A stretch of 64,000 nucleotides of DNA from assembly GCA_965649765.1 (NCBI GenBank), contig OZ287758.1, positions 21,204,001-21,268,000 of the forward strand, in the 5' to 3' direction. Below the pieces are notes generated by a model that was given only the letters and a program-made list of their open reading frames with translations, was not told where the DNA came from and ran no database searches. Every line of letters starts with the position of its first letter. Within the stretch, counting starts at the first letter, position 1. A program made the position numbers and the translations under genes. Positions 17,649-56,300 of this stretch are shown here, in pieces. The DNA comes from Bispira polyomma. Taxonomy: Eukaryota.

Positions 17649-18571
17649 CTAGTGTTGTATTATATTTTGTAGAGATTTGGCTACAGTGGAGGAAGCGTTG
17701 GGAGTAAACTGGAGATAAGACCATACAGCGGATGATCTCCAGCCCCCATGGGCCATAATGGCTTGGAGTTCCACATTATTGTCAAAGGCCAGGGTCACAC
17801 CCGAGCGACGGAAGGAATGGAACCCAAAGACTGAGGGTTGAGAGACATTGACACAATTATTTCCCTCAGAACTCGCCTGACTTTATAAGCAGTCAACGGC
17901 ACTAACTGCCTATTGACTTTACACATAAATACTGGAGACTCATCTTGGTTTTTATTTTTTGCAAACATATACCTTAATGCAGAAATAGGGCACAAATCCG
18001 ACTTTCCCAATGTCGGCAGCTGGACCACGTGGTACTGGTTGCACTTCTGCAAATTTTTAGCCCACCTGAGTACTATGTGTACTCCAGGTGAACCCCACAC
18101 AAAATCCTGGCAAGTGAGATGTCTCTCAGGATTGAATTGAGTAATACTAGTTGGGACTAGATTAGATAGACGGAAAAATCCGAAAAAAGCAGTGAGAAAC
18201 AAAGCTTTGTAGACATATGTATGGGGAAATGCAGAAGAGTGGTGAATGATGGAAGTAAGGATAGGAAGAGTAATTATGCCCTTCAATCGAGGTGCATAAG
18301 GGGTAGATAGAGAGAGGGATTTGAGAAACAATTTTATTTGAGGGTGAGAGAAGTTTTGAATAGGCAGAAGCCAAAGGTGAAAGTGGTATTTAATGGTTGA
18401 AAGGTAATTTTGAATAGAAGGAGGTTTGAGGCCTTGCTGTGCTAGATACTCCACAAATTGCAACAAGAAATGAAGAGAAGAGATCTCAACTTCCCCAAGG
18501 AATATGGCAAATGCCAGAAACAATCTAATACATTTGGAGTAAGCCTTTTGTGTTTTGTCAGTAAAGGCCAT
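17649..18571 (-). pseudogene. DIRS tyrosine recombinase (one frameshift near 17820)
   Basis: AFFGFFRLSNL (R), LRWAKN (K), then in the shifted frame FHSFRRSG..AIMAHGGWRSSAVWSY (H-R-W-Y catalytic residues); stop at 17649. Confidence 0.92.
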
Positions 18572-18634
18572 TTCTAACCGAGAATGTGCTGCATTGGTTA
18601 GGAAATTTTTCAGTGGTGAACCTGAAATAGTAAA

Positions 18635-20906
18635 TTACAATGAATTGTTTAATACAAAATGACTTTTGGTGACCACCCACCATTTCTTTTTAGCTAATTC
18701 ATCATGCACTAATACATTTTTCTGCCCTGGTAGGAGCATACGCGACAAATAATCAGCCTGTACATTTTTAACTCCAGGTATGTGGACTATGTCAAGTTTA
18801 ATATTGTTTTTTGCCGTTTCAAGCCAAATTGATCTTGCCATGACCCCTAGCCCCTGATCATGAAACCTACCGGAGTTAAGTCCCGCAACGAATGCACCAT
18901 TGTCGCACCACAACTTTACTGTAGAGTTTTTAAAACAATGACCCCACATACATAAAGCCACTAATACGTTCCACATTTCATAATGCACTATTCCAAATGT
19001 TTCAGGTTTTTCAGATGGGAGAGCAGCAGCATATACATTACTGCCCCATACTCCCCAATGCCCACCAGGGATGCATCCACAAATAACTCATGTACAGGTT
19101 CACTTTTAAGGTGCATTTCCACCACCCCGTTGAAACTCGACAGAATTTTGACTTTTTGAGAAATTTGAGGATTATTCTTTTACTGGGGTAGGTTTCTCTC
19201 AGTAATTTTAACATTCGGTTTAAAAACAAACGAGCTGGAATGATGCATCTGTGAACGTATAACAGTTTACCCAGAATTGACTGAAGTTCCCTTCTGGAAC
19301 ATTGGGTTTTATTTCTCCATTGTTTACACATAGTTTTAATTTGATCAAGCTTTTCTTCAGGAATTTTGAGAGTACCTTTGTTTGCATTCACCAGTATGCC
19401 CATACATACCACCTCCTCTGCTGGGGGAAATACCTTTTTGGGGTTTATGGGTAGACCGAGATACTCAATCAGACTGTATAATTGATCAAAAGATTCATGG
19501 GCTTTTTCACTTGATCGATCAGATCAACCAGATCGTCTATATAGTTCCATATATGATATTGTTTCCTACTCATGAGGCGGCGTATACTGTCAGTCATCCG
19601 TTCACAAACAGCCGTGCCGTGCTTATAACCCATCATCACTGCTAAATCAATATAAGTAAGATCTCTCCAACGCAAGCCTGTGTACTTATAATCTCCTGGG
19701 TCAATGCGCAGGTTTCGAAATGCGTGGGAGAGATCAAGCTTGTATAACTTAGCAGTGGGGCCAATTTCGTTTATGCGATCAACCAATATATCTATTGTGG
19801 GAAGTGTTAAAACGAAGTCTTGCCCATCATACACACCCTCTGTAACTACACTATTAACAGATGTTTTATCATGTAGCCATGAGAGGTCAACAATTAGTCG
19901 CCTGGTATTGTCATCTTTAGGTCTGGTCAGTACAGGTGAGCAGTGCAACTGCTTGTAAGGATTTGTATTAAAAGGACCTGCAATTGCTTTGTGCAGACGT
20001 TCAGTTACAAAATACTTGTCCACACTGCAATGCACTATCATGATTGGTTACACTATTATTAAAAACAAAACCCTCAGTTTTCATATGTAGGGGAAATCCG
20101 AATTCCAAATATTCAGGTAACAGGATATCCCCATCCTCTTTTAATACTTGTCGCCATGCTTTGATGTTCAATTCAGAAGGGACAGGTATACGTGCCCCCA
20201 AGTAATTAGGGCACCCCAATTTGGTAACTTCTTCATGGGCTTTCACAGCCCACTCCTCAAGTGAGTTGAATTCTACATTGTTTCTGGCAATAGGAATTTC
20301 TCCAACGTGTTTATATATGCACATAAAACCAAAGTTGTCCCTTGATTTAACACCTAGACCTTTCATTCTACCTTTGCCTTTCAAGGGATTAGTGCTAGCA
20401 ATTGCCTCACACTTTGAACTGTCATTAAGGGGTTCGCCCTGATTGTTAGGTTTGCTAACACACAACTGATTTGACACCTTTGGGGTGTGACAAAGGGGTT
20501 TGCCCTGAATAGATTTTGATTGAAAAGGAGGGGGGGAAACCACCCCACCTTTTTCCTTGTGAAAGGGTTCTCCACCCTTTCCACTCTCAAACCTTTCACT
20601 ACTCGTACTGGGAGTGTCAACTTGTTTACCACAAGACCTGTCACTTTGTTTAACAATGTTTTTGTTTACACACTTCACACTTATATTGTTATCAACATTT
20701 CGCGGGACCCCCACTGTAATAACATTTGTACACACAGATTTCCCGCCCTTTTTACCAGGAGGGAAGCCTCCCACACAGGCCTTAATTACACTGGTTTTGC
20801 CGCCCTTTTTACAAGGGGGAAAAACAACATTATTTACATTGTCATTTGTTCTACTTTCTACTACTTTTTGCTTATGCTTCGTGCACACTTTGTGTGGTTC
20901 ACCCAC
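18635..20906 (-). pseudogene. DIRS reverse transcriptase / RNase H (frameshifted)
   Basis: LEFGFPL, CSPVLTRPK..RRLIVDLS, LYKLDLSHAFRNL, MGYKHG..CER, WNYIDD, ELQSILGKL, VKLWCDN..HIPGVKNVQADYLSR across four ORF pieces. Confidence 0.93.
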
Positions 20907-21065
20907 AGCACTAAAATTGCTAATGTCTCTATGAATATGATATTTCTCAACACTTCTTCCACTACAACTTTGAACACTATCTACATTAACACTATCCTTA
21001 CTCTTAAAAACTCGTTCTTTTAGGTCATAACTACTGTTCTAAATCACCCTTGAAACTACTGGCTG

Positions 21066-22340
21066 TCAGTTGTTAGAACCCTTGTGGAAATCTTTGGAGT
21101 AACTACTCCCCTTACACTGAGTCTCCCTGTGGAGCTGGATACGTTTGTCCTTAGTGTAACTCTTAGCACACGCATGTTTCAAGGTCAAATTGCCAAATAT
21201 ATGGTCATCACTCTGGCTGCAAGTGCCTTTGTTATAGGCATTGCACATAACTATGTTTCCTTTACTGCTATTTTTTGAGTGAGTAGCACCCTTTTGAGAA
21301 CAGATTGATTATTGTCCTTAAGAGTACGCTGAGTCAACCTGGCACGCAATTCATGTATTTCACTAAGATTATCCCAACTGATTTTGCCTTTTTCCATCTC
21401 AAGCAATAACTGACAGTGTGCACTTTTTACCGTGTACCAGGGTGTTTCAAGTGCATCTCTCATGAGCTGCATCCCGTATTTTAACATGTTATCACGAATT
21501 TTGGCATTTTTCTCTTCATACACACAACCCATATACCCCTGAAACCACATGAGGGGGGTTAATTCCTAATAAGCAGGCTGTTTTTTACCAGCAATATTGT
21601 AACACAACTCATGGGGCCAATTAATTACGTGTTTTACATGATACTCAGATGTTCTTTGTAACGCAGATTTAAGTCTCTTACCATGTTCTGGTGAACGATA
21701 CAGCTGAGATTTGTGACGTCGCAGTCTCTGGTCAACCTGAGCCTGGATCTGCTCATTGGTCTTTAGGAAGTGCTGACTTGGTAGGTAGAATGGTGTCTTC
21801 CAGATCAGAGTCGTCTTGCTGCCAGGCATAATGTGGCTTGTGATGAGATTTTTTCTGCCTCCTACTCTGTGGCACATAATCAATATAAACACCACTGTCC
21901 TCCGAAGTGTCCTGATGATAGCCACGACGTGGAGGGGAACTGTGTGAGGGAACTTTCACTGATTCTGCTTTTTTCCCTTTTTTAACTTCACACATATCAC
22001 TTTCCAGTCTATTAAGTTTATCCAATAGAAGGTCCAAGGTACTGCTCTGCTCCTTTCCCTCTTCGGCAACGTCCTGCCTGGCTTCGTATAACAAATTGTC
22101 TTTCTTCTTAGACTTGCCTGGTCTCACTGGTGTCTCTGGTTCTGCCTGGGGCTGAGCTCGCTTTTGTGCATGCATCGTGGGGCCATTATCTTCCCCTGAG
22201 TCCAAAGCACACAATCTTCCAACGGGCCTCGGGTGGATCACTTGACATCTCTTGCAGTATCCTTTTTTGATAGGCGTTTTTATATATATCCACTCTACAA
22301 ATAGTCTGAGTAAAATCCGTGATTTCTGTAACAATAACAC
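21066..22340 (-). pseudogene. DIRS gag-like ORF1 (broken)
   Basis: N-terminal CKRCQVIHPRPVGRLC, central WPHE..WFQGY..W, C-terminal CNAYNKGTC..H..KHACAK knuckle; split by frameshifts and a stop. Confidence 0.8.
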
Positions 22341-29528: not shown

Positions 29529-30730
29529 GTGAAGAGGAAGATTGTAGAGAAGAAGAAGGAGAGGGAGTTTGAAGTTAGAGTTTCATCAGATGAACTGGAG
29601 AGGAAGAGGAGAGATGATAGAGTGAGCCCAACACTGAGTGAGAGGGTAGAGAATGACAGAGAGTTAGAGGCTTTCCAAAGATTGAAGGATTCGTCGGAGG
29701 GATTGCTTAGATTTTCACAGTTCAGAGGACGTGTAAAGAAGACAGGAAAAATGGTCCATGTGATTCTCACAGAGGAATATGAGGAAGCAGTGGTAGAATC
29801 TGTCAGATACAACAAAGTGCTTTTCAACAAGCACCAGTTCAAGGACCAGTCCCTCAAGGAGAAGTTATGGTCAGACTTCGCCGCTACCCGTGAATTGAAA
29901 ACCACAGAGGTAAAGACATTTTTCGAATCCCAGAGGACGCATTTTGGGAAGCTGATGATAAAGAAGTCTGGACAAGAGTAGTTTTTTTGTACTACACATA
30001 TATACTACTGACAAGCCCCACCTGATTTCACCGACCGATAGAATTGGCTGATCACACGCTTCTCGTTTGTGGGATCACACATTGTCAGACATGTGAACTC
30101 TTGAGGCTTTAAGCGTTTGAATGACCACCCACAGAACTTTTTGACCCAGCAGTCTCAGCATCCACCTGAACAGTTTGTTTTGATGGATACAGCTACAGAG
30201 CGTTCGGCTGCTGGGTTGTCCCAGGAGAAGCCTGTTTCAACGTACCTCCCACAGAACTTTACGACACAGCAGTCTCAGCAGAGTGTGAAATCGTGGACTT
30301 AGTATATCATGGAAGAACATTCAGGGGTTGCTACTAAGTTGAAAATGCCCAGCATTTTTCCTAGTAAGCAGCACTCAAACCCACCTTCCAATGCGTCCTT
30401 GTTTGATGAGTCAGCACACAACACTTCCAGCATCTCAAACTTCCTGAGGAAGTACAACATCGAGACACCCCAGGACTTTGGATTTGAAAGAGTTAGCCCC
30501 AACGCCCCAGGAATAGTGGTAACACCTTTACCTTTGGATAACCAACAGCAACAGGTGATACTCATAGACAACACACAGCAACCATAGCAGATTGTCTCAC
30601 AGCCCCCCACACCTCAGCCAGAGTCCGAGCCCGCTTCACAACAGCAACAGCTACAGCCCCAACCCCAGCCAACTTCACAACAACTGTCAACCTCCACCAC
30701 TCCACGACCAACACCACCTCCACAGTAGCT
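29529..30730 (+). pseudogene. Harbinger MADF/Myb-SANT-like DNA-binding protein (broken)
   Basis: LTEEYEEAVVESVRYNKVLFNK..FKDQSLKEKLWSDFA..VKTFFESQRTHFGKL..KSGQ..FTDR*NWL..FSFV..HI, then a Q/P/T-rich tail; stops. Confidence 0.78.
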
Positions 30731-32799: not shown

Positions 32800-33613
32800 G
32801 CTCAGGCTCAGGTTAAACTCTTTCCTCTTGCCACGGGACAGCCCACTCATTCATAAAATAGTCCATTAACAAGTCCCTCTGTTCTTGGGGTGCTCCAGTG
32901 CTGGGTTTCCACATCAGAGTCTCAGTAGATTATGTAATATCACACATGTCAATGTCAGATTTGAGGCCGCCAGGGGGTATTGTTGCATCGTCGTTAGTAA
33001 TAGGCGGAACCGGCTAGTCAAAATCCCAAAAACGTTCTCCACCACCCGCCTTCTCCTGGATATCTTGTGGTTACAAATTCTCTGGTGATGGGTGAGTGCC
33101 CTCCTTGAGTCGGGTTTCATCAGTTACGTTTTCAGAGCAAAGGCCTCGTCCCCCAGCAGAAAGTAATCCACATCACATTGAGACCCCTCAAACAGTCGTG
33201 CTGGTCTGCGCAGCCCGATGGATCCAAATTCTATCTTCTGCTTGAGCACTGTAGCTCTCCCCAGTGGCCAGGTGCCTTAAAGTTACAGCCAGTTTCAGTC
33301 CAACATCCAAGGGCTTTCTGTACCAAGTTATGGCTCTTCTGACATGGGGTGTCATCGTCTCCTTGATTTCAGGTGGCAGCCTGAAAAAATTTCTGTGTGC
33401 AGGTGCATCCCCCTCCACTAGCTCCAGCATTAAGTTTGTGTAGTATCTTTTCCCCTCACTTTGCCTGATCCAGGGCTTGACCCAGTGGATTGGTGACCTA
33501 CGTTGAAGTCTAATCTTCTCTGGGAAATCCCAAGGGGCACGTGTTGGTGTTAGGTTTAATTCTTCCTGAGTCTGAGCCTGAGCCTTGTCTTTCTCATGTT
33601 GTAATATAAACAT
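32800..33613 (-). pseudogene. Harbinger (HARBI1-like, DDE_Tnp_4) transposase with internal deletion
   Basis: WVKPWI..YYTNLMLEL..HRNFFRLPP..KLAVTLRHLATGESY then YFLLGDEAFAL..LMKP..RRVVENVFGILTSRFR..CVILHNL; the DG-motif region is missing. Confidence 0.9.
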
Positions 33614-36190: not shown

Positions 36191-38401
36191 ATTTAAAAAT
36201 TGCAGCTAACAAGTCAATTACTTTTAATGTATATTAGAGGTATACAATACTTTTCCATTTTTAATCATTTAATTGGTAACATTGAATGTTTATCAAAATT
36301 GGTTTACGGCTCCAAATTTTTTTTTAAATTATGCCAAGGCGATACACAAATACATTTTTTAAAAGTAAAAGATTTCATGTTCCGAATACACTTCTACAAT
36401 GCACACATCCAGAGACCGAAAAGCTAAACAATTATATATTATCACAGTAGTGTACTATTTTAAGGTTTAGGTAAGGATGGATATCAACAACAATAAAAAT
36501 CGCTACTGATGTTAAGCAATTGTGAAACGATAAATTTATCCAAACCATTGAAGTATTGGAGTGACCTTTATATGGAAGGTTTTTCTTTCTGGACCATTTA
36601 TTGACCATTATGGGCCAAAGTGTTGTCGGCTTGTAAAGTTTACATGTGTACATTGTGACCTGAAGGTATTGGTTACTTTGATTAGTATGCCTGGTACATG
36701 CTTTGTATACCGGCTTAAGGTGGATTAACATAACTTGGCCGATCAAAGTTCACATATTTGTTAATTACAGACTGTGAAAATTTAGGAACTGGTGTATTGT
36801 GTGAGAACCTAGTTCATTTGAAACCGTGAAAAAAATTCAGAAATTAATAATACCAACATGAGAACAAGGGAAAAAATTGAAATGAAACTACTTTACATAT
36901 ATGTAAATATTTTATTGATAACCATAGAGGTAGTGATGCTGTACAATGTGTAAAGCAAGTGAATATGTCAGGACCCTTTTATGTGATATTTTGTTAATAT
37001 TGTAGAAATAATCAGTTTAAACAGGTGACTTTAACAAGAACAAACAGTGAATCTACTACATCCTAGTTACACAGTAGCCTGCTGCAGTGCAAAGATATGC
37101 AAATGTCTTTTGGGAGTTGGAATGATTACTGTCAAATATCTTTTATGATAACTGTGAAAATGCCAGTAAAGTGTAACAACTAGGGATTACCTTAAATATA
37201 AACTCTTTGTGAAAAGTATGAAGTAACTTTAATATACAATGCCTTTAAATAAACGAACAAACCTGATATAGTCAATGTAAAATTATTTAATACAAGTTTT
37301 GCAATTTGAAGCAATTCTGATACACAATGTTATTGAATCCTGAAGTTATTGTAGAAAAGCTGAAGCAAAAAATAGTCTCATTTCTATGTACATAAACATA
37401 TAACATATTCGTTTTTGTACAAAAGAAGTACCATCTATTCGAACACTCTACAAAAACAATATCATAATGGACGCAAACAGAATTGAGATATTAAAAACAT
37501 TATACAATTGAGTCAGTTATGAATTCTAGTTTCCCTAAACTCATAAAGGTAATCCAACTGGGAATTACCAATGAATACAAAGAACAACAATGAACTAAAG
37601 TGACAAAACAAAACAACTTTACTTCTAGTTTTCTAGACAGAAATGAAGCATTTCTACACGTAAACTCAACTAACAACATGTATTTAGATATAACACTGTG
37701 ATTTGACAGAACATATTTATATACCTCTTATTAATGTACATCATTACATCATACACTTTAAATATTTTACATTGTCCTTACATAAGTTCATTATTCCACG
37801 TCCCCCCTCCTCCACCGTCCTTTCTGATAACTTGTTCAATAGCCATACATCCAACCTTACAGGCAGTCCTTTATGCTGCCAAAACAGTAAAACAGACACT
37901 TCATTATTTTGGTAACATAAAAATACAACAACAAGTTCTTTTTAAAATTACTAAATTTACAATTAAATTGATTTATCAATGGTGAACCTTATTTAGAAAT
38001 TAGCCTCATACATTTTAAATTGTCACTGTTAACCCATCACGTTAATATGATTACATGACTAGTTATACAACTAACAATCGACAGTTGCACTGTAAGAAAT
38101 ATTGCTTCTTATGCCACAACAAATATTCTTGTTATTAACAATAATAGGCCTGAATGCTGTGACATTGAAATACATTTTATTTATGATTAACACCATTATG
38201 GCTAGAAAATAATTAAGGTATTGAACAGAACTATGTATGGTGTAACATAAGTGAATATAAAGCTGTCACACATTTAAAAGTTGGATCCAAATGATAATGC
38301 AAAAAGATTACATCACAGGTAATATTTATTACAGGCGAATTTTCATTTCTTTGATAAAATTGCACATTCAAGAATCCACATGAAGTGCAGAGTTAACCAT
38401 C

Positions 38402-39289: not shown

Positions 39290-39453
39290 GTCAAAAGTCA
39301 CAGTTTAGGGTTTTACGTCATATTCAACAGCTAGGGTCATATTGGGACAGGCCCACAGCATTTGTCACTTGCGAAGGTGAACCCACACAGAGGTGACAGC
39401 CTGTGATTAGATGCCAAACTAGCTAACCATTCGTCTACGGAGGACCTTCCGAA
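39290..39453 (-). mobile_element. Short tRNA-derived SINE with near-perfect TSD
   Basis: Minus strand gtagacgaatggttagc..aatcacaggctgtcacctct..ctgtcccaatatgacc..gacgtaaaac; flanked by acattttgaaaa / acatttgaaaa. Confidence 0.8.
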
Positions 39454-39658: not shown

Positions 39659-39835
39659 TTAAGGACTTGTGGAGTTGTAGGAGCCAAACACACCCTCATT
39701 TCTCCCACCGGATATGCCAAATGTGGTAATGAATATATTCATGAGCATCACGAAGTACAAAAGGTATGTGGCCATATGCTGCCAGAAGGACACTTTACGG
39801 AATGCCATCCTTTCTTGACGGTCTTCATATTGCTC
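39659..39835 (-). CDS. Ninjurin-like protein, last coding exon (second TM helix)
   Basis: ctatctacag|EQYEDRQERMAFRKVSFWQHMATYLLYFVMLMNIFITTFGISGGRNEGVFGSYNSTSP*; resembles ninjurin KLDFLNNLATGLVFIIVVVNIFITAFG; phase 0 fits the upstream exon; missed by the ORF track. Confidence 0.9.
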   Translation of the reverse strand, partial: EQYEDRQERMAFRKVSFWQHMATYLLYFVMLMNIFITTFGISGGRNEGVFGSYNSTSP

Positions 39836-40368
39836 CTGTAGATAGAAAAAGTCATAGAATTTTTTAAATATATGTATGTTTTTATGTAATTTATATATAG
39901 ATGATAGGCTGGGTTGAGGTTAAAAATATGTCATACTTTACCTGCAAATATATCATTCCTATTACATATACCTTATCTATAATAATAATATGCAAGTGTG
40001 TTTTAAGCGGTTGTGGTCATCGTAGGTCATTATGTTTGTTATTGATGGAAGACTTTGACCGCAAAACAATTAATCTGACATCAATTTTATAAGTTAGACT
40101 TTATTTTTACAAATATAAGTGTTTTTGCTCACAAAAATTGCCATCTTTGGCATATGCTGGTAGGGTATTATGCTTATGATTAATTTACATGTTCCTTGTT
40201 TTCTTCAACTGTTGCAGATGATGCAGAAAATAGAAAGTTATTCCAAAAGGTGCATTATAGGTAAAAGGCATTAGTTCAATTAGTGGATGTTGCAAGCTAT
40301 CTTTTAAAACTACATTACAGTTTTACATCAACCAAATTGCAAGGAAGACAGTGTTCTTTTTGATTTAC

Positions 40369-41052
40369 CTTAACAAAGAATGCATGATGCTGTTGTGCCT
40401 CTGACAATTTCTGTTCAGCTTCTGCTTCCTCCTTTTCCTGCATGGCTGCTCGCAATTCTTCCCTTGCCTTCGCAAGTTCTTCTTCAAGGTCTGTATTGCC
40501 AGGAGTCTTCTTTAAAGCTTCCTCTACTACTTTCAAGTAGTTGCTTCCTCGTACTATTTTAACTTCAGCATCCGCACACTTGACCCGTGCCACCTCAATA
40601 TTACTGTCTGCTCGCTCCAGGTCAACAATATTTTCCATGGTGCCTGTGGTCCATTCACAGCATCCTGTTGGATCTTCCTCTGTTCCAGCTGTTCGGGGAA
40701 TAGACTGGCTTGCAGATGTTGCTCGAACACTCATATATGTCGCATTATTCTTTCGTCGACATGTTCGGCAACAGCAAGTGAGGCAATTTAACATGCCATA
40801 ACAACACCCATTTTTCTCCGAGGTCTGATAATAGTGGAGATTGCCAATATAAATTATGATGATCCCGACAAATATTTCTAAAGACAAGCAGGCAATAAGG
40901 AGTGTTAGGACAAAGTCATAGAAGCGGTGGCCTTGGCGGCCAATGTCCAGAAGAAGTTTGAGTTCAGTGATTTGGGTGAGTGTCAGAATGGTCACCAGAG
41001 CACCTTGAGCTTTGGTCTCTGATTGTTCCAATTCACTGTGGCGAGCCAACAG
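40369..41052 (-). CDS. Ninjurin-like protein, main exon (amphipathic helices, first TM, large insert)
   Basis: tactttcag|LLARHSELEQSETKAQGALVTILTLTQITELKLLLDIGRQGHRFYDFVLTLLIACLSLEIFVGIIIIYIG...HHAFFVK|gtaaat; 228 open codons; ninjurin pattern AQG.L....QLK..L..G....FY...L.LI..SL.LQI.VG. Confidence 0.92.
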
Positions 41053-41245: not shown

Positions 41246-41412
41246 TGTGTGAAAGGTGGTAGTTTCTTACTGAGGGCCGCTGGTTTCAGTGCAGTGCAGA
41301 ACCTTGATCAACTGTATGCAGTGTTTCCTCCAGCGTTTCCAACTACCCGTCCCAATATAACCTAAACAGGTACTGGAGTGGACGTTAAACATTCCAATTC
41401 AAATTCAAATTC
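41246..41412 (+). mobile_element. 5'-truncated copy of the 8395/52233 SINE
   Basis: gaaaggtggtagtt..gcagaaccttga..gtttcctccagcgtttccaactacccgtcccaatataa..(aaattc)n. Confidence 0.9.
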
Positions 41413-42356: not shown

Positions 42357-42430
42357 TTCCTTAACTTTTGCACGTCCACTTTCAGCCATTCTGGCAATAG
42401 TTTGGGCCATGTGAGGCGTGCTCCACGTAT
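42357..42430 (-). CDS. Ninjurin-like, internal exon (xTWSTPHMAQTIARMAESGRAKVKE)
   Basis: gtattttcag| 74 nt |gtaaga; phase 1 in, phase 0 out; open frame continues into LLARH. Confidence 0.75.
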
Positions 42431-45400
42431 CTGAAAATACATTGCACAAACATGTTATTTTACTTCTTTGTGCAAAAGAATTTAAAATAATAAAAAAAAT
42501 CATGTATTTGAACATTTTAAAAGGTAATATACTTTTCTTGTTGATATTCAAACAGTCTTTCTTGTGTTTTGAACATTAAATATAATCATGCACTGGTTTG
42601 TTGAAGCCAGATAAAAGTCTCTCAGAATGATAACGGACGTTTGTTTGATGATAAGTAGCATTTTGTTAGAGAACTGCCATGCACAATTTACTGATGTAGT
42701 TTTAAAGCCTTCGTTTCGTTTCTGTGTTTCCAACTAAGAGAGCTTCAAATTTCAGTTGTGACTGGTGATATTCAGATATTATGAAAACAGCTGATCACAG
42801 TTTTATGCTTTATTTGAAAATGTAGCTGCAGTGGATTAATGCAAAATATTATGTGACTGTGGTAGCTGTAAATAAGCATTGTAATGATAAATGATATGTA
42901 TGTTCCAATATATTCTGCAACTCAAACTGCAACTCAAACAAGGCTGATCAAATTTAATTGTAATAACTTTTATCTTTTGATGTTCTGAAAATCAATAATT
43001 GAAAAAATTATAACAAATAACAATACAAAAACAGACATGAGTTGATTAATGTAATGGAGTAACATTAACTAAACTCTATACACAATAATATGAAAAGTTT
43101 TTACAAAGGAAGTGTAAATCTATTACATTATGCTCAAATTATATATTAAATTAGTTATTAAGAAACTAAAATCAGCCTAACACAATATAGAAAGAAAGTA
43201 ATGTAAAATAATAAAATGATATGGTTTCAAATCCACAATTTAAAGGAGTGAGAGAGGAAATACAAGGAATTGATCATAACTCAATATAATCTGGGTGGGT
43301 TTAAGGGACTTTACTTTTAACTTCTCACAGGTAAAGCTAAGTTAAATTGATAAAAACTACCCACCCAGACCCTTATCTGTGACGTATTGCCGGAAATAAT
43401 TAACTTCCTCTCTCTTGTTAGTTGCCATTGGTGGATATTTTAATTAGAAGGAATGATTAGTCTGAAAGATATGAAATTAATATGTAAGCATGCAGTCACA
43501 ATATAGAAGGAGATATCTGAAAGATACTGTGCATATACAAAGAGGAGGATATACTATATACAAAACGGTGTAAAAGGTAATGTATATAAGATAAAGGAAG
43601 GCAATTATAGTTACAAAATTAATCAGTGATAGTTATTTTAAAACAACTGAACTAATATATACATAATTTATACACATATAAAAATAGAACAAATACCCGA
43701 CAGTGAAAACAAGATGAAGTTTATCAAAAACAAACTTGTAGAAAAATATGTTCTAAACAGTGGGGTGATCCACTATAATATACAATAAAAGACACATACC
43801 ATTTTCAAGAATATTACATTACTTTGAATATTCAACTAGCAATGTAAAATATCTATACAAGTTATTATATTGCAATTGCTTTGTCACATATTCGAAAGTT
43901 GAAAAACAACAGAATATTGTGAATATTAAAACTCTATAGAATATGTTGTCAAATATTATTTTAATTGTTTCTTTTTATAATTTGTTCAAGGGATGAACAT
44001 TTGAAGACCATTCTGTAGATGAAGAAAACCATGCTTTAAAAGCTTTTTTTTATGATATTTACTATGGTGGATATAGATAAAAAAAAACCTCCAGGCTAAG
44101 TGAAAAAAGTCTTGCTCCCTCATGGTGTGTAATGAACTGGAGGCTCAAGTTTCCTGTTAATAGCCGAACAAGACAAACATGTCATCAGGCTACATCAATA
44201 TTTGCTGCTGTTGCTGGCAATGAGAGCTCACGTCTTCTGAGCCCTTACTGCTACTTATGTTATGTTAGGGCATTTAATATCAATATACACAAGGAATCTA
44301 CCATCATCACAGAAAAGTTGTGCATCATCCCCAATTTTTCTAAACTGGTACCTTCAATATAACATGCAGAGTTCCTGCCATGTATGTTATGCTTCATTTA
44401 ATTTAAATGTATACCTCTGTCAGATTACCAACAATATGTCAGGTGTCGGGATTTATTAAAAATGATCAACTACTAGGGACAAATTCAGGATTTTCCTTCA
44501 AAAGCAGAACTACAACATAAATGCTGCCGCATGAACAGCATTCATACACATTTTAGAGGCTGGTGCAAAGGCTAATCAAGACCGAGTGTACTGTAATAAT
44601 AGAAGATAAAGAAAAATAAATTTGTTGACAAAAAGCTCCATAGAAATGGCATGATGGGGATATCAATATCCAGTTTCTTTTGTCAAGATGAAAAGGGACA
44701 TTTGAGATTCCTCTGAGGTTTCAATTAAGTATGATGTATACAGATAAAAATTACAGGATATTATATCAAATACATTTTCATTTAATTACCTTCCCGTTTC
44801 ATAACATTGTAAATATGGTGTGGCAACACTACTTTCACCAATGTGACTTCTATACATTACTAGCGTTATTACTGATATTTGTAATCAGTAAATATAACTG
44901 ACATGAATGACCTTTCTGTATTTGTATGATTTTATTAAATATATTTATAACACTTTTATAGCACTTAATCTCGATGCTAGCAGATGTTAAGGCACATACG
45001 ACAGGAAAATCACTTTTATAGTTTTATATAGTCATTGGAGGTGGAAGAGCAAATAAACCCAGTAGATAAATATTCAAAATTTCTATATTTTAAATACTGA
45101 AATAAATTGATGACCAAACTAGACAACATGTATAACTTGTTCTTGTAGTGGTATAAAGTAAGTTATTAAAAAATAATGTTTAGTATGCTTGCTCACATAA
45201 AGCTAGACTTCGTGGTGTATGGGTATATGTAGGACTATCTCTATCTGGATCTCTCGTACAATTTAGTTTAAAGTGTACAGTGGAGTGTCAAACACACTAC
45301 ATACAGTGCAGGTCTGAGTATAGAGGAACTGACCATTAATCTGGTGTTTCTTATATATTTCTCTTAGTTTCAGCATTCTAAATATGTGATACTTTATAGA

Positions 45401-48400
45401 CTAGATGACTTAGTTGTATGTTGGCTATATTTGTATTTCAAGCATTCTTAAAAAAACAGATCCATCAAATTTATTGCAGTCTTGTGAAATGCACAAACAG
45501 CTTAAGATGAGATTTTGTCTCTGTGCATACTGATGTGTGCATGAATGCCTGATGCTATAACTGGCAGTCTGTATGTGTCCCTGTATCTTTAGCTGAGATG
45601 GTATTCCTGTATGCCTGACTCAGATTTTGAGTAGCTTGTGACTGTGTGCGGAAATTGTATCTCAGGAGAAATTGCCTTTCTATGGGAAGCAAACCAGCCC
45701 CATCTTGCCCATTGCTAATAGAATTAACCTCTTTGGCCAAGGTCGGAAATACCAGCAGCAAAAATTAAACCAATCAATTCTCGGCACGGGTTCTAAATGT
45801 GGAGTTAAAGGCTCTTCAAAGTGTTAAAAAGATCTTAAATTTTCTGGCAGCTAGGAGTTTGGAGAAATGTCTGGTAAATGTCACATTATTAGATATACAT
45901 ACACCGTATAACATAGTTATGACACTGTTTCCGAGTACCTATTATCTGCTTCTGGCCTTACAAGAAATAGATACACATCAAAACATGTGTCAAGTTGCAA
46001 ATGGTATTGAGAAAATGCAAAAGAACTATTATGTGCTAGTATAAATAGCTTATAATTACCAAATAAGATAGGTGGTATGACGTCATTATGTTATGGATAG
46101 CCATTGTTGCACTGGAAACAGGCAAATGCGTCAGGAAAATAAAACAGAAACAAATACCCTTTAATATAAAAATGTCAGCTACCATAAGGAAAAAGTTGCT
46201 TCACATTTATAGTTTGCTGAACAACAATCAACCTTTTTCTAAAGAGCCTGACTAAACAGTTCCCACCACAAAGTAGTAGTTCAAGACTTAATAAACTCAG
46301 TCCTATCTATATTTGTATATGTTTCAATACACCTTAATAAAGTTCAATATCCAAATACGAAAATACCAAAAAACACAGGCTTTCAATAACCTAATTTAAT
46401 GAGAAGAAATGTACATTTAAATACTAATATTTAAATTTTACTTATGAAAATGTAGAATCTGAAATGAGAAAAAGCCAGGCTTACAATAGAGTAGTGTCTG
46501 TAAAAGAAATGGTGGAGTGCTATCTGGGAATGGAAACACCAGGCTGTGAATGGCTGCCAACAATATTTATTACAGACTCTTGCGGGAAGTGTTAAAATCC
46601 CATAGATCCTTTCTATCCTTAATTTTCCAGCAGAATAAGTACAGTTAATGCAGAGAAAAAAGCAAGGGTACAATATTTATCCCTTAATGTTAAGCTACCA
46701 CCCTTTAACAATTAAGGATGTCTAATTTTGTATTGGTTCACTCTCCCCAAATACTTTACCCTACTTTAGTGATGGAAATAATAGAGCAATCATTAATTAC
46801 AATCATTGTGAAATACACACAAATACACAATGTAATATTGTATCTCTAACAAGTGTGATATCCATGTATGTAACCTGTATTGGTGTCAGAGGTCAATGCC
46901 CCCAATGGCCTTTCTTTTATATTTTAATTACCAACAGCATTCCTGCAGCATTAATTTCATCAGAATGTATATTTGTTATTCTAGTCCTGGAGTACCATTT
47001 ACTTGGTGCTACCATAAGTAATCATAAGTACTTCGACATATGCATGATTTAAGTTAACACAGTAACATTACTTTTTTATATCATAGCCTTAAACCCAGTA
47101 GTTTAAGTAACAGACTCCAACCGTGCATTAAGGTGCCCCTACCTATAATCTTGTAAAATCTATATGTACAGCCTTTGATTTTACTTTGTGCTTGCCGTTT
47201 TTAATTTGTGGACCTCAATGTTAGTATATGCTTGTACTTTAAACTTAGATATGTAAATACAATTTATTTTAGATATAAAAACTATACATAAATTAATAAC
47301 CCTTTGATATATTTCTGTAACATTTGACTGGTTCCGGTGTACTGCAACAACAGCGGCTAAAACAGTGGCTAATCTTTCTTAGTCCAGTGAGCTACATAAA
47401 GACACTCACCTAATACAATTAATGGGGTACATGTGGCCATCTTAAGAAGAGGGTCTGGCTCGTTTCAAGAGTAGTAATTAGCACTAAATGGAGTGGGTCT
47501 ACTGACATAGAAAATGATGGGTCCTCATCAAAGCTACACTGTGACTCAAAAAACAAGGGTCTACTGATAACATGCACCAAAGCCCCAAAACACCAATGTC
47601 ATTGGTGCTTCTTTTCATCACCAAAATTAAAATTAAATTTAGTTTGGTTTAATTTAATTTAGTCTTATTTAGTTTGGTTTAGTTTGTAAAATTTCTGCAA
47701 ATATTTAAAAATTGTTAAAATGAACTAGGAAACGAAGTGCAATGATGTCACTAATCCACCTTGGCTATATGACAAACTTGACAACTATATCCCCCAAAAT
47801 GATGTCACAACACTTATTTGCAGATAACCCATTGCTTTGAGTTAGAGCAAAAACTTTAATGGTCTTGCAAAAACAAATTCTTCTTGTCAGCAGAATTGTA
47901 AGTGGCTAATTCTAGTTGATGGGCTCTCGGAGGTCATTTCTCTTGTGTTCTGAAAAGTTGATGAGCTCTCTTTTCCTACATGTTGCCAGTAATCCTGCCA
48001 CTAGAATAAAGCTCGTCTTACTTTTGGGATAGTGTCCAGAGACAGTCAAAGCAGCTTACAGTGAATGGGAGTGCTTTTGTTTTCATCAGAAAAGGCCATA
48101 GATGTCACAATGAAAGTACTGCTTCATTTTAGTACAATTTTAGTTACCTCAAACCATCAACCATAAATTTCTTCAAAAACTTTTACCTAAATCTAACATT
48201 TAAATTTTATAGTTTGAATTTGTTGATTATATGATTATTTAACTTGTCATTGGTAACACAAATTGGTAAAGTAATCTACTGAGTATCATCTATTACTAAG
48301 TGTATTACCTCACTTGTCAAAACTTGTACTAGATGTGATATTGCCTTGATGGCAGGAAGGTCCCATTTAGTACTGCCTAAGTCACTAGGCTGGTAGATGA

Positions 48401-51400
48401 CATTCTATAAAAGCAGCAGACGGGCTTCTTTGTGTTGGTATCTTAAATAAAAGACCCACAGCAATGTTCACTTTGAAGTCTGAGTGAGTTAAATGTAGTG
48501 GAATGATAAAATTACAAGTACAAAAGCCCCATTTTACTGTTCTGTGAACTTAGTTAAGTGCACTCTGGGACATTTATCAAAGGGATGCAAGAATTTATTT
48601 AGAGTGATAAAGTAAAATGAGATACCAATATGTCACAGCAATATGTTATTTTTGAAGAATGCAAACATGCTTTTTTCATGAATGAAATGACATATTTTTC
48701 CACGGCCTAACTTTACATATGTATTAAACTTTTTGTTATGTCGTCATCAACCATCATTTGTTAGGACACTTGTTTATAAGCAATACTGTTTATGAATGAG
48801 CATGTTTTGACATAGCCATATATGGGAAATGCATTATTATTGTTTTAAATGACTGTTTAAGAAACTTGTATAGTGACATGTGTTTGCATAATGATTTAGA
48901 ACGATTTTTCTTTATGGCCCTTTTGCCTCTCAACATTATGAACACAAGTGGCTTGATAGACTAAAATAATCAGAGAAAGGCTCATTTAAACCTGCTAACA
49001 GAGTGTAAAGAACAGACTTTTGATTACAGAAGACGCTGAATGATCTATTATCCCAATTACCCAGATCTTTGAAGTTGCTTCAACTAATAAGCTACAGTAA
49101 ATAGAATTATGCTCACACAGATGTCTTGTGTTTCAACATTTAACGGGTTTCATATTTTGCTGAAGTACTTCAATCACAAGATTATGGAATAAGACTACAG
49201 TACATGGAACGGATCTACACGGTCTTTACAACTTTAGCCAATAATTACATTGTAATATTATGGCGGAAATATACAATATTCATATATGGTTTGGATCTGA
49301 TCTATTCCAATTATACAATGCCTCCTACAAACCAACTACCAAGATAATGGAGATGAGAGATAGTGAAATAATTTCCAGCTATCCCTGATGAACAGATGTG
49401 TACTAGAAATCAGATATTCTGGTTGACATAAGCTTGACGCTCCAATAAGTCATGTCAAAAATAATCAAAATAATACTTATTCTGGAAATAAGCTTGCTCG
49501 ATCAACTGGATATTACAAGCTTGACATTGTGAATCTGGATTCATCTTTGCTACGATTAAAGACTACATTAAATAACTGTATTTGTCTTTCTTAATCCAAT
49601 ATACTGGTAACATACTAATATGAACCTTACATGAGGAGTTATAACCTACAGCTACTAAATATGAGCCAAGTAATGGTTACTTCATTAGGTTATCATGGAC
49701 TAAAAATCACTAAGCTATTCATATTAACTTGGCACCAAATGATGCAAGCTAACGTGAGTTCAGTATTAGAGCTAAAACTGTTAGAATAACCCTGCTTAGC
49801 TTGACATGGAAGACACAAAACCATCATACAGTGTCAACAAGGTAGCATGAGGACAACATCACGAGTTTACCCTTGTATCCTTACAGCACCATTTGGCCAG
49901 AGTTAATGTTTGATTCCACACTGGGGCAATGAAATCCCCCTCTGATATCAAGTGACAAATTGCAATCTGTCTCTTTGTGGTAGTCATTGCGGGGCTAACA
50001 TTGCAGCACGACTTGTACAAAACAAGCCCAAGAGGACTGACGGCTTAATGTAGGGATTTGTAGAGTGTTATCAGTTTGAATATACCACATGCCCTCTAAT
50101 TGCACTGAAGATTGAGGATTTGAGATAAATATATCAGAAGTTGAAAGTTATTTAAAATATAAAACAGGGCCCATGTTTAGTGTTTACCCTTTCAAAATAG
50201 AGTACCGAAGAATTACACACCACAGTAATAATTCATACAACCTTATACTCATATCTTATATCCTACTCATTTAATGATAATCTTAAACTTAAATGAATAA
50301 GTGTACATTCTTTAAAAATACAACGAAAACCCCCAAAGTGTAATTTGATACCCTTAGGGTAAGTCCACCAGCCTTTCTTTGTCAAGAACGTTATATTGTG
50401 TGATTCACTACTAGAAAACTTAATTCATAATAAACAGAACAAGTCCCTAACATATATGGCATACAACACAAAACCGGTAACCTTAACATTTCTATTTATG
50501 ACTGAGATTGCTAACTGGCTTTGGTATACAAAATAACTAACTGAATGCTTTAATGTCTTAGTTTTATAGCATCCATTAGTCACAATCAGTACTACTTACA
50601 GTGATAAAAGCTGTTTGTAAACACTGTATGTGTATGCTGTCAAAGTTGTGTGATCAGCCTCAGAAATCATGGCCTTACAATGCCTTACAAGGATGACAGC
50701 TGTTAATGTGTATCTATGGGCCGGAAGTCACATAGACGGCCTGGAAGTGTGTCAAGCACTTCACTGTCAACCAGCGGGAGTGGAAGCTTCTAGTTATTTG
50801 TCAATTTTTTTTAATAAAAAAATCACCAAAAACCTAGGTTTTTTTCTGAAAAGTTGCACTCATGAAATCAATACTGTTAGCTACAAAGCAATCAATAGCA
50901 TAAGTTAAACTCGATTTGGTAACAGATCCAAAATAAAACAACTCTTAATATGGCATGTTGTCTAAGGCATATTGTGAACAGTACAAGTGTTACCAAGACT
51001 ATATTGGTAAAACAAGGCTGCATTTTCTCCAGGTAGAAATGGCTGAACCCCATGTCTGGATATAATCCAGTACATCTATTGCATGTTATATACAAAGGAC
51101 AGATATGTTTTATGTGTTATCATAGGTAACCCAATTGTAATATAAATTTGTGTTTTTCTTGTTAACAGAGCAAAAGGAACAAACAAATACTTCAACTCAT
51201 GTTGTCATTTTTTAAAAGCATAAATAAACTTAACGTCTAGGTGAATCTGAGCATTGCAACAAAGTTCTGTTGCGGGGAGTTCCAGGAGAACCTATTTCAA
51301 TGAACTGTGTACTGCGGTCTACATTATATCATAAACAGTGACATAGTCCTCAAACAGTAATTTCTGCTTTAGCCCAGAGGTTCTTGAATATTTCCAAGTA

Positions 51401-52232
51401 AAACAAGTAAAGTGGGCAAAAGACTGACATGACATGATAAAATCTAAAGAAATGTATATTCCTTTCCACAATTGACAATCCCCATCCACTAGTGAGGACA
51501 AAATACACCCCCCGCCCCCTGCTCAAATACACAGGGAGTGATGGATTATAGAGTGGTTAAGCACATTTATTTCCTCACTGTGTAATAAAACACTGATTCA
51601 CAAATTGCTTTCCTGGGAGATAGGGTTGAATTGCTTATTTGCACTGGTTCAATGGAGTATTGATGGGTAAATCTTTAGGAGTAATGAGATTGCATCAGGA
51701 CAAGCAAGAAGTGAGAGGAAACAAGCCAAATAGGGAATGGGAGAATTCTTCTAGGCACAAACACTGGAGGAGTAAATTATCCCCTTGTTTACCCTCCTGG
51801 ATATTAAACATTCTCTGGTTTTTGGTGATTTCTGTTTTGATACCATTTATAAGCATTTTATTTTAGTAGTACATATACAATACTAAGTAAGATGATGGTA
51901 AAGCACAGATGGGTAGCTATTTTTTAAAGTATAAAGACCTAGTATATATGCAACCTGTTTTACATTTCATAGTGTAAAATATTGTTTTCTCTCTTCGGTA
52001 CCCTATAACTCAAACAGTATGGATGAATAATAGTGGGTAATTTCCTGACTGTTTCCATCAAAGAAAAAGTCCACAAACAACAACTGGGGTGTATAATGCC
52101 AGATACCACTTTGAACCACTTTAAACCCATTGCAGCCAGTTTATTTATTAAGCACACGTTTCATCAGACCAATAAACTAGACTTTGATAAAAGCCCCCAA
52201 ATCAAGCTTAAAGCTGTTTGCAGACTGGTAGA

Positions 52233-52489
52233 GGGGCCGCGGTGGCCTAGTGGTTAGCAAGCATTGCACTTCATAATCACTGGTCTCTCACCTCTGGGCG
52301 GCGTGAGTTCGAATCCCGTTGATGTCTATGTGGGAAAGGTGGTAGTTCCTTACTGTGGGCCGCTGATTTCTCTGCAGAACCTTGACCGACTGTATGCAGT
52401 GTTTCCTCCAGCGTTTCCAACTACCCGTCCCAATATAACCCACTAAAAGGTACTAGAGTGGACGTTAAATATCCAAATTCAAATTCAAA
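52233..52489 (+). mobile_element. Full-length tRNA-derived SINE with 14-bp TSD
   Basis: Same family as 8395; TSD tgcagactggtaga at 52219-52232 and 52490-52503. Confidence 0.95.
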
Positions 52490-53223: not shown

Positions 53224-53338
53224 ATTGTGACTTGGGTGTTCCCTTGCTGTGAAGGCTTCTTGCTGGACTATTATATTCCAATAATTCCAGAGCCTCGTCC
53301 CCCTCAACACCCAGACTGCGCAGGCGCCAGAAAGACAT
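53224..53338 (-). CDS. Ninjurin-like, candidate alternative first coding exon (MSFWRLRSLGVEGDEALELLEYNSPARSLHSKGTPKSQ)
   Basis: ATG preceded by an in-frame stop; 38 codons + 1 nt, then gtaagt; phase 1 matches the 42430 acceptor; GC-richer than flanks. Confidence 0.62.
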
Positions 53339-56300
53339 CTTGTGAAGCCGCTATACTTGTCATTTATCCATTTGTTTTGTATATCTCGTCACAGAATTCA
53401 CACTAAATATTGATTTGCACTATTTGACACACAAACAGCCTTAATCCATTATTCGACTACATATCTTTACCTCTACATATCTTTACCGATTGGTATCTGA
53501 TACTGATGTCACCATGATATAATTAAGACAAGACTTTAACTGTAAATGTAGTCTATATTACTACTGCAGATAGAAATGTATCTTGTCTAAACAGAATATA
53601 TTGATTTCTGAGCTTACACATCCATAGAATTGATAACTGTGTGTTGTTATTATAAAGTCCCAGCAGCTACAAAAATGACACCCTCTTTGCCTTCGTGTTA
53701 TCCTTAATTCATGCCATTCTGTCACCCCCATAAAAACAAAACATCTCTGATTACCATCACACTGTACTAAATAGCATACAACTACATGTTCTGTGGTGTT
53801 TGGTCCTCAAACACACTTCCCCTAATATAGTGCACTCTTTTGTTTACAAACAAAGCACCCGTTCAACACGACATCCCAAAGTGGAACAACAACTTTCTGC
53901 GCCCTCCCGTTTTCCCCCTCTTTCTCTTCTCCTGGCTCTGTAATATTTCCCCCAATAAATCACATTTGAGCAGCGCATTAGGAGGAATGCAATTGGTATT
54001 GCATTGCACAGTGTCTTACCATTTCGAGGCAAGGCTAGAATTAATTGACATTTTCGGGTGGAGAAATGGAAGGGGATCCCTTTTTTTCTCTTTCTCTGTA
54101 CACGGGGGTTAGAACCTTGAGAAGGTTTGTCTTTCTGTTTGTGCTTGTTGTGGAATGTTTTATAAGCAAATCATGAACGATTGCCTAATAAAGGTTAGGG
54201 AGAGAGAGGGAGGGATATTGTTTGGGGAGGTGTTGTTTACTGTATTGCTCTGTTAAATGGCGACCTTGGTGAGAATAGCTCATGCTAATTGTAATACTTG
54301 AGTCAACATTTAACCAATCACTGATTTCAAGTACTCGAACTATTCTCCTAATTGATTGGACTTTTAAAGGATCAGCGACAGTTTGATGCAGATGTGGCAA
54401 TATGCACATTTGCAACCTATTTATACATTTTGCCATTTATTTCATAAACTATCCTTGTTCATTTTGTTTGCTAAAACAGTTAACCACCTTTAAAATAGCA
54501 TTGTCAAATATCTTAGTAGACTAAGAATGGTTGAGAAGGCACTCAAGTATCAATGATGTTGGAGTTATATGAATCACCTTATGTACTGGATATACTGTAA
54601 TTTATGTGAAATGGAGCAGAAAATGTATCCTATGAAGAACACTTGGTAAATACAAGCCAAACATATCTTATAATCAATGCTGTATAGAGCATATCATGTC
54701 CTATGGTACTGCAGAGGTTTTATTGTACACTGGACCCATTATGTGCACTGCATCTTTGAAAGACAAACCCCCTTTATCTCTTATATTGTTGTATAAATGT
54801 TAAGTAAAGGTCATTCCTCAATATACAGTAAATGAGATTGGTGGTTTTAAATACCATTGATACCATACCGACATCATGCCCAGAACAGCCTTTATACCTA
54901 TGACTACATGTATAGTTTGATCAAAGCCTTCATCAGCAGAAAGGTGGGTCAGTTATTAGTTTAACCTAGTTTAAGCAATGGTTTTAGACATTGAAAATTA
55001 TAAAGTGTCAAATTTAATTCATTTACTTTCAGAACAAAGAGCTAATGGTGGTAATAAATGTTTATGTGCTGGTATTTAAATAATCATGGTATTTTATTCT
55101 AAATATTCTTTCACTTATACAGTTACTCTAATGAGTAAATTGAAGGTTTTACAAATCTACAAATGCAATGTGTACCAGGCTACAACTGTACCAATGAATA
55201 TTTGATAATATGCCACAATGTTACAACAGTGTGTTATTTTTTTTGATATGCTTTATTATAATGTATGGCTGCAGCAATACCCCAATTAGATTGGCATCTA
55301 CTGTATTCTTGTTATTAATCATGGCTTTTTTGTCTATTCATTCACAATATGGTATAAATAATTACTGAAGCATTACTGCAATACATCAAGTTATGAGTTC
55401 ATTTATAGCATTGGAATGGTACTATCACTTCCCTTGCTTGGCTTTGTCCGAACTACATTCCATTTGTTTATTTCACCATGTTGGTCAACTTAATTTTCTT
55501 TTAATGGGCAGACAAATTTGTAGCCTTTTTATTTTTAATTCACCCTGCTGAATGGAATCCTGTTTTAGCAGAGGTGTTTTCTCCTGGTTCCTTGATATTC
55601 AACGTATAAGGGTTACAACTGTGTAAACCAAATAAATAACTGTTTATCTGTACCACTCTAATGGAGATGAAGTATGTTCCAGTTCAGTCTTATTTAGCAT
55701 GAGATAAGCTACAATCAGGACAATTTATGTGGCTACAGTTGTAGCTTTAATATCTTATCAGTACCACCCATCTTTTTCCCATTTCCATTGGATTTAAGGG
55801 TCTAATCATGTTCCCACAGCCATACATATAGACACACATTCACACAATCAATATTAGTAACAACATCTAACTTTACAGGGTGCGTACTTACTTGGTTGCT
55901 GTGTTCAGTATTAGTTATACCTTGGCAATCATATTTTATAGTGTAATGTCAATCACTCGTTATCTGATAAAATATTATTGCCTTGATTTTTAACCGGCAT
56001 GTATGACAGTTGATCATTACACAGCTGCTAACTAGACAAATGGAAAAGATGGAGAGTTTCTGACCAAAAAGTTGTTGATGAATGTTTTATTGTGGCCTCA
56101 TTGGAGGAAAACTGGCACCTGCAATAGCTTCAGTGGACTAGCAATATATAGTCTATATAGTCTATTTTTACAATTTCCCTTCACTAACATGCACGTTTCC
56201 TGTCAAATATGTTACCAACAAGGATGACTCACACACTTATAATGACGTTTTAAAAATAATACCTGGGTTTACTCCTCCAAATTGACTGTAAATGTTGCCT

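What the first reader, a model, noticed from the sequence alone, without database searches (positions are those of the whole stretch)
39659..41052. Split ninjurin: ~165-aa Cys-rich and coiled-coil insert between the two transmembrane helices
Seen: the spliced protein has both halves of the ninjurin domain (..ELKLLLDIG..FY..LEIFVGIIIIYIG and ..KVSFWQHMATYLLYFVMLMNIFITTFG). Between them lie ~167 aa: a juxtamembrane Cys cluster (GCCYGMLNCLTCCCRTCRRK), a second GCCEW, and a long E/K/A-rich heptad segment (..LEEELAKAREELRAAMQEKEEAEAEQKLSEAQ..). Established: in NINJ1/2, which polymerise in membranes (NINJ1 executes plasma-membrane rupture), this loop is only about 10 residues. Inference: the Cys cluster plus RRK suggests a palmitoylated cytosolic domain. 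A coiled coil grafted into the TM hairpin could act as a sensor, scaffold or oligomerisation switch, giving a regulated ninjurin subfamily. This is the best candidate for a novel system in the window.
Basis: partly seen in the sequence, partly recalled or inferred. Interest (0 to 1): 0.85.

Follow-up and report, generated by a model that had tools for sequence, protein, structure and literature searches.

The report
Worm ninjurin with a cytosolic stalk
This gene encodes a relative of NINJ1, the protein that bursts dying cells, but its short inner loop has grown into a conserved 170-residue domain with a cysteine cluster and a long helical stalk, which could give ninjurins an intracellular control handle that has not been described.

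Summary
Confirmed. A minus-strand gene (coding exons 43428-43365, 42430-42357, 41052-40369, 39835-39659; 332 aa) encodes both halves of a ninjurin, with 172 residues where NINJ1 has 12. The insert is coding: 61 synonymous against 6 non-synonymous changes relative to a related genome, and homologues carry both halves plus insert in one intronless ORF. Models of two homologues superimpose on resting NINJ1 (9BIA, 2.0-2.9 A), with the insert looped out as a Cys-rich helix, a disordered linker with a YxxV motif, a second CC pair and a long antiparallel hairpin running into the last TM helix. C-tail sequons (49/51) place the insert in the cytosol. The only named homologue is Capitella (71%), so the family looks annelid. 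This genome holds at least 13 complete long-insert genes, and no short ninjurin was found. The K45-D53 filament latch and alpha1 amphipathicity are lost; the side-by-side TM interface is kept. Best reading: a non-lytic, palmitoylated ninjurin scaffold (0.5); a regulated lytic executioner is the main rival (0.3). No RNA or functional data. No paper or Pfam family describes the architecture.

The parts
53224..53338 (-). Alternative first coding exon (ATG, 38 codons + 1 nt, GTAAGT donor), phase-compatible with the exon at 42430; splicing onto this gene is inferred
   Evidence: 15 synonymous / 1 non-synonymous change against the related contig, ATG and donor conserved
43365..43428 (-). First coding exon (ATG, 21 codons + 1 nt, GTGGGT donor)
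   Evidence: 19 of 21 residues identical in related contig L027; not found in Capitella locus
42357..42430 (-). Second coding exon, 24 codons; nearly invariant N-terminal extension ahead of ninjurin helix alpha1
   Evidence: 24/24 identical in L027 (7 synonymous changes), 23/24 in Capitella L030 and L028, 22/24 in L031/L032, with AG/GT ends where read
40369..41052 (-). Large exon, 228 codons: ninjurin N-half plus most of the insert
40939..41052 (-). alpha1/alpha2 (TM1 of resting NINJ1); K45 position is Glu, D53 position is Val, K65 kept
40843..40920 (-). TM helix equivalent to NINJ1 alpha3; G95 kept
40747..40806 (-). Juxtamembrane Cys cluster (7 Cys) with basic tail, predicted helix; palmitoylation inferred
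   Evidence: weak CYSTM hit below cut-off
40726..40737 (-). Conserved YxxV motif in the disordered linker
   Evidence: Tyr in 44/46, Val in 35/40 homologues; linker pLDDT <50
40657..40662 (-). Second CC pair after an acidic patch
   Evidence: 33/38 and 34/42 conserved; present in the paralogue clade too
40504..40638 (-). Hairpin helix A (about 45 residues, heptad pattern)
   Evidence: pLDDT 94-98 in homologue model; a/d hydrophobic fraction 0.69
40369..40503 (-). PGN turn and hairpin helix B, which continues across the intron into the last TM helix
39836..40368 (-). 533-nt phase-0 GT-AG intron inside helix B; absent from several homologues
   Evidence: intronless ORFs
39659..39835 (-). Last exon: end of helix B, TM helix equivalent to NINJ1 alpha4 (39716-39796), tail with N-glycosylation sequon (39668-39676), stop

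Best explanation
A ninjurin-fold membrane protein that by default sits in the three-helix resting conformation of NINJ1 (C-terminus outside, insert and probably N-terminus inside) and is not itself lytic. SHOWN: ninjurin homology of both halves, a coding and conserved insert, loss of K45/D53 and of alpha1 amphipathicity, retention of the alpha3/alpha4 contact residues. PREDICTED: three-helix core plus an antiparallel hairpin of roughly 7-8 nm continuous with the last TM helix. INFERRED: the two Cys clusters are S-acylated and pin the base of the stalk to the inner leaflet; the YxxV motif is a sorting or SH2-type docking site; the conserved Glu/Ala surface of the stalk binds a partner, the neighbouring protomer or the nearly invariant N-terminal extension. 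It would therefore work as an oligomeric membrane scaffold or signalling/adhesion protein, like the rupture-independent roles of NINJ1/2, with the stalk as its cytosolic interface.
For: Models match resting NINJ1 9BIA over 110/110 residues at 2.9 A and 105/110 at 2.0 A, against 5.2-5.3 A for filament forms. K45 is Glu in 27/31 and D53 is Val/Met/Ile in clade A; K45Q and D53A abolish lysis in NINJ1 (PMC10307626). alpha1 hydrophobic moment is 0.10-0.20 against 0.35-0.39 in short ninjurins. K65, G95, T123, N133, F135 and G140 equivalents are kept. C-tail sequons 49/51 against 19 expected. Many stalk positions are conserved at about 90%. Ninjurins have rupture-independent roles (PMC13503662).
Against: AlphaFold also predicts resting-like models for lytic NINJ1 (PMC11711097), so the unkinked model does not discriminate. 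The N119 position is Gln in 45/46, and N119Q was among the mutants tested on the NINJ1 dimer interface. No short ninjurin was found in this genome, so these genes may have to do the rupture job. No expression, lipidation or partner data. Hydrophobic moments come from 12-residue windows.
Confidence: 0.5

Rival explanations
1. A regulated lytic executioner. The stalk is a lock or lever on the last TM helix that holds the resting dimer shut until a cytosolic signal (deacylation, Tyr phosphorylation, protease cut in the acidic linker, partner binding, tension) releases it; a different latch, for example the invariant Lys two residues after the K45 position with a conserved Glu, replaces K45-D53.
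For: The insert sits in the loop (105-112) that, with the N-terminal residues 33-38, forms the resting-state nanobody epitope of NINJ1 (PMC11711097). Filament side contacts are conserved. Only long-insert ninjurins were found in this genome. The paralogue clade keeps Lys at the K45 position and is expanded and fast-evolving, as immune families often are.
Against: D53 is absent in both clades and alpha1 amphipathicity is low in most rows. Intron-split genes can escape the genome search, so a short ninjurin may exist. The window's gene is single-copy and slow-evolving.
Confidence: 0.3
2. A natural brake: it co-assembles through the conserved alpha3/alpha4 surface with lytic ninjurins (a short one, or the paralogue clade) and caps their filaments; the stalk couples the brake to cytosolic signals.
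For: K45Q and D53A NINJ1 are dominant-negative (PMC10307626); this protein has lost both residues but keeps the side interface.
Against: No short lytic partner found in the genome; the two clades are only about 20-30% identical, so co-assembly is doubtful.
Confidence: 0.12
3. Artefact: the insert is an unspliced intron, or the two halves belong to different genes or were mis-assembled.
For: No RNA run holds this stretch.
Against: Purifying selection in the insert (61:6); intronless full-length ORFs in other genomes; 55 database proteins with both halves and a 177-247-residue insert; an identical 1.9-kb contig in three DNA runs.
Confidence: 0.02

Closest known systems
NINJ1, resting dimer (PDB 9BIA; PMC11711097)
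   Same: Three-helix core superimposes over its whole length; K65, G95, T123, N133, F135, G140 equivalents kept; loop on the cytosolic side.
   Different: 172-residue loop instead of 12; K45->E, D53->V, Y41->L, K44->S, D116->S, N119->Q, N120->H; a conserved N-terminal extension and a glycosylation sequon in the C-tail.
NINJ1/NINJ2 filaments (8SZA, 8SZB, 8UIP, 8CQR)
   Same: Sequence matches in two stretches; all 101-102 residues align structurally.
   Different: rmsd 5.2-5.3 A because the models are unkinked; the K45-D53 salt bridge, the most prominent filament contact (PMC10307626), cannot form.
Short invertebrate ninjurins (P0190, P0191, P0194, P0196, P0198)
   Same: Profile-profile probability 97.9%, E 4e-13 over 73 columns, ungapped through alpha1; Gln at the E49 position.
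   Different: They keep KK..Q(G)M/LD and a short loop, and form a separate branch with full support.
CYSTM Cys-rich membrane module (PF12734)
   Same: Weak match to the first Cys cluster (E 0.0036).
   Different: 17.8 bits, below the 25.2 cut-off; compositional likeness only.
Generic antiparallel hairpins (IpaB, FliJ, prefoldin, PspA/Vipp1/ESCRT-III, p85 iSH2)
   Same: The stalk aligns to each at Z 10-12, 1.2-3 A.
   Different: Hundreds of unrelated chains score alike; no homology or function follows.

Membership tests
Ninjurin (PF04923) | HMM score above the curated cut-off | tested here: met
   36.5 bits vs 26 for the large exon; 39.1 for Capitella P0006; some paralogue-clade members fall just below
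Ninjurin (PF04923) | alpha1/alpha2 followed by two TM helices, in order, forming the ninjurin bundle | tested here: met
   Two-stretch profile match; homologue models superimpose on 9BIA
Ninjurin (PF04923) | Short (about 12-residue) cytosolic loop between the last two helices | tested here: not met
   172 residues here; 177-247 in 55 homologues. This is the variant feature
Ninjurin (PF04923) | C-terminus outside, loop inside | tested here: met
   Indirect: sequon in 49/51 tails vs 19.3 (max 29) in shuffles
NINJ1-type rupture executioner | K45-D53 inter-subunit salt bridge | tested here: not met
   Glu and Val at these positions (PMC10307626)
NINJ1-type rupture executioner | Amphipathic alpha1 | tested here: not met
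   Hydrophobic moment 0.15 vs 0.35-0.39; short window, rough measure
NINJ1-type rupture executioner | alpha3/alpha4 side interface (G95-F127, K65-F135, T123, I134, A138) | tested here: met
   G, Y, K, F, T, I/V kept; A138 is Thr/Ala
NINJ1-type rupture executioner | Filament formation and LDH release | not testable with these tools
   Needs cell and cryo-EM assays; no oligomer prediction available
CYSTM (PF12734) | Score above cut-off | tested here: not met
   17.8 vs 25.2 bits
S-acylated membrane protein | Thioester-linked fatty acid on juxtamembrane Cys | not testable with these tools
   Sequence context only

The most novel reading that the evidence does not exclude
Annelids turned ninjurin into a family of signal-gated rupture proteins, perhaps replacing the short form: a lipid-anchored cytosolic stalk fused to the last TM helix, together with a nearly invariant N-terminal extension, locks the resting dimer and releases it on an intracellular cue. 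That would be a built-in molecular trigger for ninjurin activation, the step still unknown for NINJ1.
Probability: 0.25. Interest if true: 0.85.

Novelty: new variant of a known kind. Interest (0 to 1): 0.62.

Why it matters
The trigger that opens the resting NINJ1 dimer is stated to be unknown (PMC11711097). Known ninjurins offer almost no cytosolic surface. Here the cytosolic loop, the same site where a resting-state nanobody binds NINJ1, carries a large conserved domain continuous with a TM helix. The family gives natural variants (a slow single-copy gene without K45, at least 12 fast paralogues with Lys there, stalks of different length) for testing how ninjurins are held shut, and what they do when they do not rupture membranes. 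It also bears on how annelids carry out lytic cell death.

Tried and rejected
No RNA run was available. A wider protein search with a mixed alignment returned only its own members, so the range outside annelids is not settled. The insert alone has no Pfam family above cut-off and no usable Atlas hit. Tropomyosin, NDUFA5, phage-scaffold, BST2, F-BAR, SH3BP5 and ESCRT-III/PspA matches were rejected as generic coiled-coil hits. My first translation of the 42430 exon was out of frame (fixed). In the first tree P0124 was mis-extracted; the tree was rebuilt without it and P0195. Paper searches for ninjurin with annelid, or with coiled-coil, paralogs and non-canonical, gave none. Assembly accessions could not be tied to organisms. 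Other ATG/phase-1 exon candidates upstream showed no coding conservation or lay outside the comparison.

Full report
Observation. The window comes from a 1.035-Gb animal genome. On the minus strand, 41052-40369 is a 228-codon exon with AG and GT ends in phase 0, and 39835-39659 is a 58-codon terminal exon. The first matches Pfam Ninjurin over residues 9-93 above the cut-off. The second matches NINJ1 112-142. A profile of 51 homologues matches NINJ2 and NINJ1 in two separate stretches. Between the equivalents of NINJ1 L101 and K114 there are 172 residues instead of 12.

Gene model. Comparison with a related assembly (L027) and with Capitella revealed two more coding exons. Exon 42430-42357 (24 codons) is identical in L027 with 7 synonymous changes, and 22-23 of 24 identical in Capitella and two other organisms; the Capitella annotation missed it. 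Exon 43428-43365 supplies the ATG in phase 1. The four exons give 332 codons. A second ATG exon in the same phase at 53338-53224 shows 15 synonymous changes to 1 non-synonymous and is probably an alternative start. No RNA run exists for this stretch, so the joins rest on splice signals, phase and conservation.

The insert is real. Against L027 it shows 61 synonymous and 6 non-synonymous codon changes. Several homologues encode N-half, insert and C-half as one intronless ORF on genomic contigs. Fifty-five database proteins have both halves and an insert of 177-247 residues with a median of 8 Cys. The only named hit is Capitella teleta CAPTEDRAFT_205572, 71% identical. No named mollusc or other protein appeared, so the family looks annelid, but most hits are unnamed. 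One divergent member comes from assembly GCA_001642005.1, which I recall as the orthonectid Intoshia linei; I could not verify this.

Family in this genome. A profile search found 14 N-half loci on four contigs, 12 of them with a C-half close by; a thirteenth complete, intron-split gene lies about 80 kb from this one. The window's gene is the single member of a slow clade (A). The others belong to a faster, expanded clade (B) with the same layout. Short ninjurins form a separate branch. Three searches found no short ninjurin in the genome, but intron-split genes can be missed, so absence is not shown.

Structure. AlphaFold models of a clade A homologue (P0003; pLDDT 78) and a clade B homologue (P0167; pLDDT 80) agree: an unbroken alpha1/alpha2 helix, a TM helix, a Cys-rich helix of low confidence, a disordered linker, then two long helices of high confidence, the second running straight into the last TM helix. 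In the re-alignment of Foldseek's candidates, both models' top match is resting NINJ1, 9BIA (Z 11.9, 2.9 A, 110/110; Z 13.5, 2.0 A, 105/110). Filament forms align at 5.2-5.3 A. Foldseek alone gave nothing significant, and these Z values are close to those of unrelated helical chains; the match convinces through its full coverage and its agreement with the sequence evidence. The stalk is a generic antiparallel hairpin with no specific relative. From helix rise it would be about 7-8 nm long (inference).

Topology. C-terminal tails carry an N-glycosylation sequon in 49 of 51 homologues, against 19 in shuffles; the window's tail has one too. So the C-terminus is outside and the insert inside, as for the NINJ1 loop 105-112 (PMC11711097). 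In resting NINJ1 the N-terminus is also inside, next to this loop. The nearly invariant N-terminal extension and the stalk would then be neighbours; whether they touch is untested. A YxxV motif is conserved inside the otherwise variable linker (Tyr 44/46), which fits a cytosolic docking or sorting signal.

Lytic residues. The register to short ninjurins is ungapped through alpha1. K45 and D53, whose salt bridge is the most prominent filament contact and whose mutants are non-lytic and dominant-negative (PMC10307626), are Glu and Val. The alpha1 hydrophobic moment falls from 0.35-0.39 to 0.15. The side-by-side contacts are kept: K65, G95, an aromatic at F127, T123, N133, I134, F135. Clade B keeps Lys at the K45 position but also lacks D53.

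Mechanism. The most likely reading (0.5) is a non-lytic, acylated ninjurin that oligomerises through its TM helices and uses the stalk and YxxV motif as a cytosolic interface; rupture-independent ninjurin functions are known (PMC13503662). The main rival (0.3) is a gated executioner in which the stalk locks the resting dimer and another latch replaces K45-D53. The unkinked models cannot decide between them, since AlphaFold predicts resting-like NINJ1 as well. A dominant-negative brake is possible (0.12). An artefact is excluded (0.02).

Novelty and verdict. It is a ninjurin by sequence and fold, but fails two features of NINJ1-type executioners and has a domain no described member has. Pfam has no family for the insert, the Atlas has no usable hit, and the paper searches found no description; subscription papers were not searchable. 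New variant of a known kind; interest 0.62, because it is solid, conserved and offers a direct handle on ninjurin regulation, while its function is untested.

Noticed in passing
window 53338-53224 and 43428-43365 (-): Two conserved ATG exons with phase-1 donors that both fit the acceptor at 42430, so the protein probably has alternative N-termini. Other candidates (59705, 47440, 49987 and others) were not supported or not covered.
   Followed up: partly
L030 8808-8879 (Capitella contig KB307920.1): The public Capitella gene model uses a different first exon and omits the 24-codon exon that is 23/24 identical to the window's; likely a mis-annotation or another isoform.
   Followed up: partly
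G000:C11 about 21325550-21327815 (+), L079: Clade B paralogue about 80 kb away, with an intron-split N-half and a much shortened hairpin; stalk length varies in the family.
   Followed up: partly
G000:C10 46.95-46.99 Mb, C3 71.2-71.3 Mb and 82.48-82.49 Mb, C11 7.38-7.59 Mb: Local clusters of clade B paralogues; some loci show only one half and may be partial, split or decayed.
   Followed up: partly
window about 17800-22300 (-): Broken ORFs with weak tyrosine-recombinase SAM and reverse-transcriptase hits: probably a DIRS-type retrotransposon remnant.
   Followed up: no
window 39290-39430 and 41250-41370 (also about 8490-8590, 52330-52440): Very high-copy short interspersed repeats flank the gene's last exons.
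   Followed up: no
window 36893-36966 and 37805-37909: Short blocks downstream of the stop conserved in L027 (96% over 74 nt; 80% over 109 nt); 3' UTR element or another gene's exon.
   Followed up: no
window 53796-54054, 45652-45814, 49832-49983, 51505-51666: Conserved blocks with indels upstream of the gene (73-78% identity to L077); candidate promoters or UTR exons.
   Followed up: no
window 29529-29981 (+), 33188-33613 (-), 7954-8337 (-): ORFs without Pfam hits that look like transposon fragments (inference from sequence only).
   Followed up: no
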